NCBI RefSeq assembly: GCF_001194135.2
Contig: NC_068986.1
Span: 75,880,970-75,915,304, forward strand
Reading direction: 5' to 3'
Length of the DNA stretch: 34,335 bases
Source: Octopus bimaculoides
Lineage: Eukaryota
The notes beneath the pieces are model-generated. The model made no database searches. It had not been told where the DNA came from and saw only the letters and a list, made by a program, of their open reading frames with translations. A program made the translations under genes and the position numbers. Below are positions 31,357-31,674 of this stretch, piece after piece (within the stretch, counting starts at the first letter, position 1; each line of letters begins with the position of its first letter).

Positions 31357-31674
31357 TTAGGCTGTTGAAACATATGGGTCCGAAGACCTCCTCCTTGATC
31401 GTCTCCTTCGCCTACGTCCTCTCCTACTCCGCCTCCTACGCCTTCTCCCTCCAAGCGCTCTCCTACGCCTTCTCGAACGACGACGACGACCTCTTCTGCG
31501 ACTCCTTCGTCTTCTGCGGAAACCTCCATCCAACAAACTCTGCTGGCTGTTAGCATTACGAGGAGCTGTGATTCTCCGACGCCTATAACCGGCAGCTACT
31601 GAAGGCGTCCGGCAACCGTTAATGGAGCCGAGAAATTTACGGCCCAGAGTCTGAACTTTATCTTTCAGAATCAT
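31357..31674 (-). CDS. Sperm protamine precursor-like protein (105 aa, 41 Arg), intronless
   Basis: aa53-96 contain 34 Arg in 44 residues as R3-6 clusters split by S/G, using mixed AGA/AGG/CGT/CGA/CGC/CGG codons (not a microsatellite). LLDGG|FRRRRRS and LGG|RRRRRRS recall the cuttlefish spermatid T1 precursor junction (LLKGG|RRRRRRS), and SRRRSSDPY recalls SRRRSRSPY. TATA, Inr and AATAAA are all correctly placed. Confidence 0.88.
   Translation of the reverse strand: MILKDKVQTLGRKFLGSINGCRTPSVAAGYRRRRITAPRNANSQQSLLDGGFRRRRRSRRRGRRRRSRRRRRALGGRRRRRRSRRGRRRRRRSRRRSSDPYVSTA

What the first reader, a model, noticed from the sequence alone, without database searches (positions are those of the whole stretch)
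31357..31674. Protamine gene that looks like a multi-unit polyprotein precursor
Seen: the 105-aa ORF has a ~51-aa pro-region, then two similar Arg-rich units, LLDGG|F-R5-S-R3-G-R4-S-R5-A and LGG|R6-S-R2-G-R6-S-R3-SSDPY, plus a degenerate third (AAG|YRRRR). Known: decapod cephalopod protamines are made as precursors (spermatid T1/T2) whose leader ends in ...LLKGG before the Arg run, and octopus sperm contain several short protamines. Inference: an internal duplication retained the GG processing site, so one intronless gene could yield two or more short mature protamines by repeated cleavage.
Basis: partly seen in the sequence, partly recalled or inferred. Interest (0 to 1): 0.85.

Follow-up and report, generated by a model that had tools for sequence, protein, structure and literature searches.

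The report
Intronless protamine-precursor gene in a mollusc
This is very probably a small, intron-free gene for a sperm DNA-packing protein (a protamine made with a removable leader), which is an ordinary kind of gene; the idea that it is cut into several short protamines remains an untested guess.

Summary
The 105-codon ORF at 31357-31674 (minus strand) is real and reads exactly as described. After a 51-residue leader ending SLLDGG come two arginine blocks separated by A-L-G-G, then the tail SSDPYVSTA. The core has 34 Arg in 45 codons and uses all six Arg codons, with G at codon position 2 in 40 of 44 core codons. That is selection on the protein, not a microsatellite. A TATA box, the first downstream ATG, AATAAA and a GT-rich element frame it as a compact intronless transcription unit. 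It is best read as a protamine-precursor gene of the kind known in squid and cuttlefish.

The polyprotein reading is not supported by what I could test:
- The two "units" are no more alike than shuffled Arg-rich segments (P 0.22-0.43).
- Their codons match only at chance level (3/14).
- The second GG site has a different context (RALGG against SLLDGG).
- The "third unit" is just an R4 cluster.
- Only the recurrence of GG directly before an Arg run is unusual (naive P about 0.001).

No homologue was found in any database, so conservation could not be tested. Tools place the window among molluscs, not specifically cephalopods. Interest is modest.

The parts
31357..31674 (-). Complete coding sequence: 105 codons plus the TAA stop at 31357-31359. 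Predicted precursor 12.7 kDa, pI about 12.
31522..31674 (-). Leader (pro-region), aa1-51. Moderately basic (7 Arg, 3 Lys, 2 Asp), holds the only Cys (C21), has an internal YRRRR cluster (aa30-34) and no hydrophobic signal-peptide stretch. No homologue was found anywhere.
31522..31536 (-). L-L-D-G-G (aa47-51). Inferred main processing site, with cleavage between G51 and F52.
   Evidence: Sequence. Cleavage is inferred by analogy with N-terminal processing of squid and other protamine precursors (PMC12216123).
31456..31521 (-). Arg block 1, aa52-73: F-R5-S-R3-G-R4-S-R5-A (17 Arg in 22 residues).
31447..31458 (-). A-L-G-G spacer (aa73-76) between the two Arg blocks.
31387..31446 (-). Arg block 2, aa77-96: R6-S-R2-G-R6-S-R3 (17 Arg in 20 residues).
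31360..31386 (-). Non-basic C-terminal tail SSDPYVSTA (aa97-105).
31433..31474 (-). Two exact copies of GAGAAGGCGTAGGAG, 27 nt apart (31460-31474 and 31433-31447; aa67-72 and aa76-81).
   Evidence: P about 0.014 against synonymous-codon shuffles
31765..31771 (-). TATATAA box, 91-97 nt upstream of the ATG. No other ATG lies between it and the ORF start. An in-frame TAG sits at 31714-31716.
31806..31815 (-). TGACACGTCA, which contains a CRE half-site (ACGTCA), 35-44 nt upstream of the TATA box. An E-box, CACGTG, is at 31788-31793. These are candidate spermatid-type promoter elements only.
   Evidence: The half-site occurs 16 times in the window on both strands, so this is suggestive only.
31263..31300 (-). 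Polyadenylation signal AATAAA (31295-31300), 57 nt after the stop codon, followed by a GT-rich downstream element (31263-31278). Predicted mRNA about 0.45-0.5 kb.

Best explanation
A stand-alone, intronless gene encodes a 105-residue precursor of an arginine-cluster protamine, a sperm nuclear basic protein.

Inferred mechanism:
1. The gene is transcribed in spermatids from a TATA promoter as an mRNA of about 0.45-0.5 kb.
2. The precursor enters the nucleus, and its Ser residues in R-R-x-S contexts are probably phosphorylated.
3. The 51-residue leader is removed at ...SLLDGG|F, as happens with other protamine precursors.
4. The product is about 54 residues (7.1 kDa). Its two R17 blocks, joined by a short flexible A-L-G-G hinge, neutralise and condense sperm DNA. 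Some end-trimming is possible.

What is shown: the ORF, its composition, its codon pattern and the flanking Pol II signals. What is inferred: testis expression, the cleavage site, and that the spacer stays intact.
For: - Arg core of 34 in 45 codons, using all six Arg codons, with G at codon position 2 in 40 of 44 codons.
- It is the only strongly basic ATG-started ORF in the window.
- TATATAA, first ATG, in-frame upstream stop, AATAAA and a GT-rich element. This joint arrangement is found at about 1% of random positions.
- The post-leader product of 54 aa, with 76% Arg in its core, is the same size class as the single mature squid/cuttlefish protamine (Sp2: 58 aa, 79% Arg; PMC3073880).
- Removal of an N-terminal domain from protamine precursors is described as common in invertebrates and vertebrates, including the squid Loligo opalescens (PMC12216123).
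- The two Arg blocks show no sign of being separately evolving, duplicated cassettes.
Against: - No homologue of the whole protein or of the leader was found in 5.8 billion or 1.84 billion proteins, in metagenome contigs or in Pfam. Conservation and expression are therefore untested.
- GG directly before an Arg run occurs twice (naive P about 0.0012). That would fit a repeated site.
- From my own memory, unverified here: Octopus vulgaris sperm are reported to hold a 44-residue protamine made only of R, S and G, plus three of 28-33 residues. A 54-mer containing F, A, L, D, P, Y, V and T would match none of them.
- The leader is more than twice the length I recall for decapods (about 21 residues).
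Confidence: 0.5

Rival explanations
1. Polyprotein reading. The precursor is cut after both GG dipeptides (G51|F52 and G76|R77), and perhaps elsewhere. One gene then yields two short protamines of about 22-25 and about 29 residues, each with 17 Arg.
For: - GG immediately precedes an Arg run twice, naive P about 0.0012.
- Both predicted products carry 17 Arg, enough charge for a short protamine.
- SNBPs generated by extensive cleavage of one precursor are documented elsewhere: insects (PMC12216123) and, by the titles cited there, a Mytilus H1-like protein and liverwort H1s.
- From my memory only: O. vulgaris sperm are reported to contain three protamines of 33, 28 and 30 residues. C-terminal fragments aa73-105, 76-105 and 78-105 would be 33, 30 and 28 residues. 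This is a numerical coincidence, not a match of sequences.
Against: - The site contexts differ (SLLDGG|F against RRALGG|R).
- The units are no more similar than shuffles (P 0.22-0.43), and their codons match at chance (3/14). Nothing marks them as repeated cassettes.
- Gly GGR codons are single-step neighbours of AGR Arg codons, so GG next to Arg runs is favoured by mutation.
- Exact look-up of ten predicted fragments found none among 15 billion sequences. This is uninformative if the species differs.
- The 'third unit' would give a non-protamine peptide.
Confidence: 0.2
2. A real Arg-rich ORF, but not a functional sperm protamine gene. It could be an unexpressed or decaying paralogue of a protamine gene family, or an Arg-rich nuclear or nucleolar protein expressed elsewhere.
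For: - No expression or conservation evidence could be obtained.
- The gene sits in repeat-rich DNA, next to what look like transposon remnants.
- From memory: the protamine of the octopod Eledone is Cys-rich and quite unlike this ORF, and the main O. vulgaris protamine has only R, S and G.
Against: The ORF is intact. It has a single ATG in a purine -3 context and a full set of promoter and 3'-end signals. Arg codons are heavily mixed, as expected for long-maintained selection on the protein rather than decay.
Confidence: 0.15
3. A chance open frame in purine-rich, low-complexity DNA, or the last exon of a larger gene.
For: The Arg-coding core is 75% purine and lacks stop codons in several frames. 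Overlapping 84-aa and 62-aa ORFs exist in other frames.
Against: - 14 of the 34 core Arg codons are CGN, interleaved with AGR. G sits at codon position 2 in 91% of core codons.
- The 51-codon leader, of ordinary composition, is also open.
- A TATA box, an in-frame upstream stop and the first ATG define a 5' end.
Confidence: 0.05

Closest known systems
Decapod cephalopod protamine precursors (cuttlefish spermatid proteins T1/T2 giving Sp1/Sp2; the Loligo opalescens protamine gene)
   Same: A small precursor whose N-terminal leader is removed, leaving an Arg-cluster protamine of 50-60 residues. Sp2 is 58 aa with 79% Arg (PMC3073880). Squid precursor processing is described in PMC12216123. The post-leader product here is 54 aa with a 76% Arg core.
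   Different: The leader is 51 aa, against about 21 by my memory. There is no detectable sequence homology to anything in the databases. Only one Tyr, against 4-5 in squid. An internal A-L-G-G spacer and a 9-residue non-basic tail are present.
Octopus vulgaris sperm protamines Po2-Po5 (Gimenez-Bonafe et al. 2004, Mol Reprod Dev 68:232; recalled from memory, paper not held)
   Same: Arg clusters interrupted only by Ser and Gly, which is what I recall for Po2 (44 aa, R/S/G only, 79.5% Arg). The two R/S/G-only stretches here (aa53-72 and aa75-98) add up to 44 residues with 34 Arg. Several short products (28-33 aa) are reported in that species.
   Different: No continuous 44-residue R/S/G stretch exists here; A73-L74 interrupt it. 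The sequences could not be compared, and exact look-ups of predicted fragments failed. The species of the window is unknown.
SNBPs made by multiple cleavage of one precursor (Mytilus PL-II*/PL-IV from an H1-like protein; liverwort protamines from H1; bush-cricket and cicada SNBPs)
   Same: A precedent for one gene giving several sperm basic proteins by proteolysis (PMC12216123, including the cited titles of Carlos et al. 1993 and D'Ippolito et al. 2019).
   Different: Those precursors are H1-like, with a winged-helix domain, or much longer. Here there is no folded domain (no Pfam hit), and multiple cleavage is only conjectured.
Mammalian protamine P2 precursor
   Same: An Arg-rich protamine synthesised with an N-terminal extension that is removed during spermiogenesis (PMC12216123).
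   Different: No sequence relation: the Pfam protamine families do not match. There is no Cys or His in the mature part.

Membership tests
Protamine-type sperm nuclear basic proteins (compositional class, not a homology family) | Small size (about 3-10 kDa mature) and very high arginine content arranged in clusters separated by neutral residues | tested here: met
   aa52-105 is 7.1 kDa with 63% Arg. The core aa52-96 has 76% Arg, in clusters of 2-6 separated by S or G. The class definition comes from PMC11607694 and PMC3073880.
Protamine-type sperm nuclear basic proteins (compositional class, not a homology family) | Expressed in spermatids, and replaces histones on sperm DNA | not testable with these tools
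   No transcriptome or proteome of the source species is available. Only promoter-like motifs are seen: TATA, a CRE half-site and an E-box.
Cephalopod (decapod-type) protamine precursors | Sequence homology of the leader and/or mature part to Sepia or Loligo precursors | tested here: inconclusive
   No hits at all in the protein searches. The full-length search was swamped by 8000 poly-Arg candidates, so absence of a hit says little. The reference sequences are not printed in any held paper.
Cephalopod (decapod-type) protamine precursors | N-terminal leader removed at a defined site just before the Arg domain | not testable with these tools
   A plausible site, SLLDGG|F, is present. Cleavage needs protein chemistry to confirm.
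Cephalopod (decapod-type) protamine precursors | The source organism is a cephalopod | tested here: inconclusive
   The neighbouring SERTA-motif ORF has gastropods (Batillaria 55%, Haliotis 52%, Gigantopelta 51%) and a bivalve as its best hits, and no cephalopod hit. TTAGGG-type repeats fit molluscs in general.
Polyprotein SNBP precursors (several mature basic proteins from one translation product) | Repeated homologous cassettes, each preceded by the same processing motif | tested here: not met
   Unit-to-unit similarity is at chance (P 0.22 and 0.43). Codon identity is 3/14 against 23% expected. The motif contexts SLLDGG and RRALGG share only GG plus a displaced Leu.
Polyprotein SNBP precursors (several mature basic proteins from one translation product) | Several mature products, mapping to different parts of one precursor, found in sperm | not testable with these tools
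   Exact look-up of ten predicted fragments found nothing.
Pfam protamine families (vertebrate P1/P2 and others) | Match to a curated profile | tested here: not met
   0 Pfam families at E<=10.

The most novel reading that the evidence does not exclude
One intronless gene encodes a tandem protamine 'polyprotein'. A GG-directed spermatid protease cuts after G51 and again after G76, with possible further trimming. This releases two or more short protamines of 20-33 residues, and would explain at gene level why octopod sperm are reported to carry a family of short, mutually homologous protamines.
Probability: 0.18. Interest if true: 0.55.

Novelty: new member of a known kind. Interest (0 to 1): 0.3.

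Why it matters
Invertebrate protamine genes are hard to find. Arg-rich low-complexity sequences defeat similarity searches, and that is what happened here. A cleanly delimited gene with its promoter and 3' end is therefore a useful anchor for annotating the source genome and for studying spermatid-specific transcription in molluscs. If the internal GG were a real second cleavage site, the gene would link a set of short sperm protamines to a single precursor. It would also point to a GG-specific processing protease. That would interest specialists, but multi-cleavage SNBP precursors are already known in mussels, insects and liverworts, so it would extend a known theme rather than open a new one.

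Tried and rejected
1. Full-length protein search: 8000 poly-Arg candidates, none significant. It was uninformative because the candidate list was saturated.
2. Leader-only searches by word index, by full HMMER against 1.84 billion representatives and against metagenome contigs: nothing found.
3. Exact look-ups of the ORF and of ten predicted mature fragments: nothing found.
4. Pfam on the ORF: no family.
5. Literature. The primary cephalopod papers are not held. Searches for LLKGG and for peptide strings from this ORF hit nothing relevant.
6. Taxon identification through the neighbouring SERTA gene and through the ENA contigs of its relatives: only 'mollusc-like', and the ENA records are unnamed.
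7. Rfam and tRNA scans of the window: nothing found.
9. A 27-nt tandem duplication suggested by the 15-nt repeat: by eye, the remaining bases of the two copies match at only about 6 of 15 ungapped positions. I left it as a short local repeat.
10. Microsatellite origin of the Arg run: rejected, given six Arg codons, CGN interleaved with AGR, and only a weak TRF signal.
11. A mariner-like transposon next to the gene, which I thought I recognised: not confirmed by Pfam.
12. Other protamine-like or Cys-rich SNBP genes in the window: none. The Cys-rich ORFs are all microsatellite translations.

Full report
**1. The observation.** The window is a draft metazoan scaffold with seven N gaps, abundant microsatellites and about 38% G+C. 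On the minus strand, 31674 to 31357, there is an ATG-to-TAA ORF of 105 codons. Its translation is MILKDKVQTLGRKFLGSINGCRTPSVAAGYRRRRITAPRNANSQQSLLDGG / FRRRRRSRRRGRRRRSRRRRRA / LGG / RRRRRRSRRGRRRRRRSRRR / SSDPYVSTA. There are 41 Arg in all. After G51 there are 34 Arg in 54 residues, and 34 in 45 within aa52-96.

**2. Is it more than chance?** Yes.
- The Arg run is not simple-sequence DNA. All six Arg codons are used (AGG 13, CGT 10, AGA 10, CGG 3, CGA 3, CGC 2).
- CGN and AGR codons are interleaved. G occupies codon position 2 in 40 of 44 core codons, while positions 1 and 3 vary.
- Tandem Repeats Finder reports only a weak 12-nt signal with 3.2 copies.
- This is the signature of selection for arginine in one reading frame.
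- No other ATG-started ORF of at least 40 aa in the window is strongly basic. The only other Arg-rich 20-residue frame is a (GA)n-microsatellite ER/KR translation at 17582-17644. All 'Cys-rich' ORFs are translations of (TG)n or (CA)n tracts.

**3. Gene anatomy.** All positions are on the minus strand.
- A TATATAA box lies at 31771-31765, 91-97 nt before the ATG.
- There is no ATG between that box and the ORF start.
- An in-frame TAG at 31716-31714 closes the frame upstream.
- The start context is GGCGATGA, with a purine at -3.
- AATAAA sits at 31300-31295, 57 nt after the stop, followed by a GT-rich stretch at 31278-31263.
- Upstream of the TATA box are TGACACGTCA (31815-31806), which contains a CRE half-site, and CACGTG (31793-31788). 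These are suggestive only; the half-site occurs 16 times in the window.
- A TATA-like motif 60-130 nt upstream, combined with AATAAA 20-120 nt downstream of a 318-nt span, is found at about 1% of random positions in the window.

The simplest reading is a compact, intronless Pol II gene giving an mRNA of about 0.45-0.5 kb.

**4. Relatives.** None could be found.
- The full-length search was saturated by poly-Arg candidates.
- The leader alone found nothing by word index, nothing by full HMMER against 1.84 billion representatives, and nothing in metagenome contigs.
- The exact sequence is not on record.
- Pfam has no match.

Conservation of the leader, of the GG sites and of the two-block layout therefore could not be tested. 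That comparison would have been the most informative one.

**5. The only taxonomic evidence I could get is the neighbouring ORF at 23906-25097 (plus strand). It carries a SERTA motif, and its best relatives are SERTAD4-like proteins of gastropods (Batillaria 55%, Haliotis 52%, Gigantopelta 51%) and a bivalve. No cephalopod protein appeared. The window is therefore mollusc-like, with the class unresolved. The R/S/G cluster style of the protein and the microsatellite-laden draft assembly are compatible with an octopod, but that is my impression, not a result.

**6. Testing the interpretation.**

(a) Internal duplication. The expectation from codon frequencies is 23%. Alignment scores are matched or beaten by 22% of composition-preserving shuffles for aa52-73 against aa77-98, and by 43% for the R/S/G cores. 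The S-G-S order and the matching Ser codon classes (AGT/AGT, TCG/TCA) are weak hints at best. The only significant DNA repeat is a 15-nt exact match 27 nt apart (aa67-72 against aa76-81; P about 0.014). It lies in a different register. A duplication that created two cassettes is therefore not demonstrated. If it happened, it is old.

(b) A retained GG site. GG directly before five or more Arg occurs twice. With the Arg positions fixed and the other residues shuffled, this happens in 0.12% of trials. That is the one feature in favour. Three cautions apply. The test is post hoc. GGA and GGG are single-step neighbours of AGA and AGG, so Gly next to Arg runs is favoured by mutation. The contexts also differ: S-L-L-D-G-G|F against R-R-A-L-G-G|R, with Leu at P4/P5 in one and P3 in the other.

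(c) The third unit. AAG|YRRRR has neither GG nor Leu. Cleavage there would release a 22-mer with only 5 Arg. I reject it.

**7. What is known.**

From held papers:
- Protamines are 3-10 kDa and can reach 80% Arg, as in the squid Loligo opalescens (PMC11607694).
- Squid/cuttlefish Sp2 has 58 residues, 79% Arg, 4 Tyr and one Pro (PMC3073880).
- Cleavage of an N-terminal domain from protamine precursors is common in invertebrates and vertebrates, squid included. Some insect SNBPs arise by extensive cleavage of a precursor (PMC12216123).
- Cleavage of an H1-like protein in Mytilus, and of H1s in a liverwort, is cited there by title.

From my own memory, unverified because the papers are not held:
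- Cuttlefish T1/T2 lose a leader of about 21 residues.
- The Eledone protamine is an 84-residue Cys-rich protein.
- O. vulgaris sperm hold Po2 (44 residues, only R, S and G, 79.5% Arg) and Po3-Po5 (33, 28 and 30 residues).

Against those recalled figures, the R/S/G-only stretches here are 20 and 24 residues, 44 in total with 34 Arg. The nested C-terminal fragments 73-105, 76-105 and 78-105 are 33, 30 and 28 residues. These coincidences cut both ways. The first suggests an uncleaved GG in a Po2-like product. The second suggests ragged cleavage around ALGG. Without the sequences they are numerology.

**8. Verdict.** The ORF is most likely a genuine protamine-precursor gene, at about 0.8 for that general statement. 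The best-supported mechanism is removal of the leader at SLLDGG|F, giving a two-block protamine of about 54 residues with an ALGG hinge (0.5). The polyprotein reading is possible but unsupported beyond the recurrence of GG (about 0.2). A silent paralogue or a non-sperm Arg-rich protein (0.15) and a chance or partial ORF (0.05) remain.

As a kind of object it is a new member of a known class. The leader is an orphan sequence, as is usual for these fast-evolving genes. The decisive data are testis RNA-seq, orthologue alignments and top-down mass spectrometry of sperm basic proteins. The expected masses are given.

Noticed in passing
window 23906-25097 (+), open to 25357 across an N gap at 25098-25333: A long ORF with a SERTA motif (Pfam PF06031, E=1e-11). 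Its best relatives are molluscan SERTAD4-like proteins (gastropods 51-55%), and no cephalopod hit appeared. The C-terminal half is made of long Thr, Ser and Asn homopolymer tracts. It lies convergent with the protamine gene, about 6 kb away.
   Followed up: partly
window 12629-13084 (-): A 151-aa ORF with a Pif1 helicase 2B domain (PF21530, E=1e-14). It is probably a fragment of a Helitron-type or Pif1-like element.
   Followed up: partly
window 2894-2998: Short telomere-type repeats in both orientations: GGGTTA units at 2903-2937, then CCTAAC/CCCTAA units at 2947-2998. This is an interstitial, head-to-head TTAGGG-type block.
   Followed up: no
window 30300-31043 (mainly - strand): Short ORFs with motifs that reminded me of the N-terminal part of mariner-type transposases (…VYEWFRRFHEGRKNV…, …LFTADQKDIRVQFHEIS…), just downstream of the protamine gene's 3' end. 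Pfam did not confirm this.
   Followed up: partly
window 21808-21893 and 22468-22772: A perfect 29-bp x 3 tandem repeat, and nearby arrays with periods of 34 and 29 bp. Not explained.
   Followed up: no
window 29253-29977; N gaps at 506-515, 971-1886, 7278-7287, 11974-12364, 16277-16292, 25098-25333, 30792-30801: A 725-bp degenerate (AT)n/(TATG)-type microsatellite, and seven assembly gaps of varied length. These are the marks of a scaffolded short-read draft assembly. Many of the long 'ORFs' in the window are translations of such repeats or of Ns.
   Followed up: yes
window 31302-31556 (-) and 31365-31553 (+): ORFs of 84 aa and 62 aa overlap the Arg-coding core in other frames. They are open only because the purine-rich core lacks stop codons, and are not credible genes.
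   Followed up: yes
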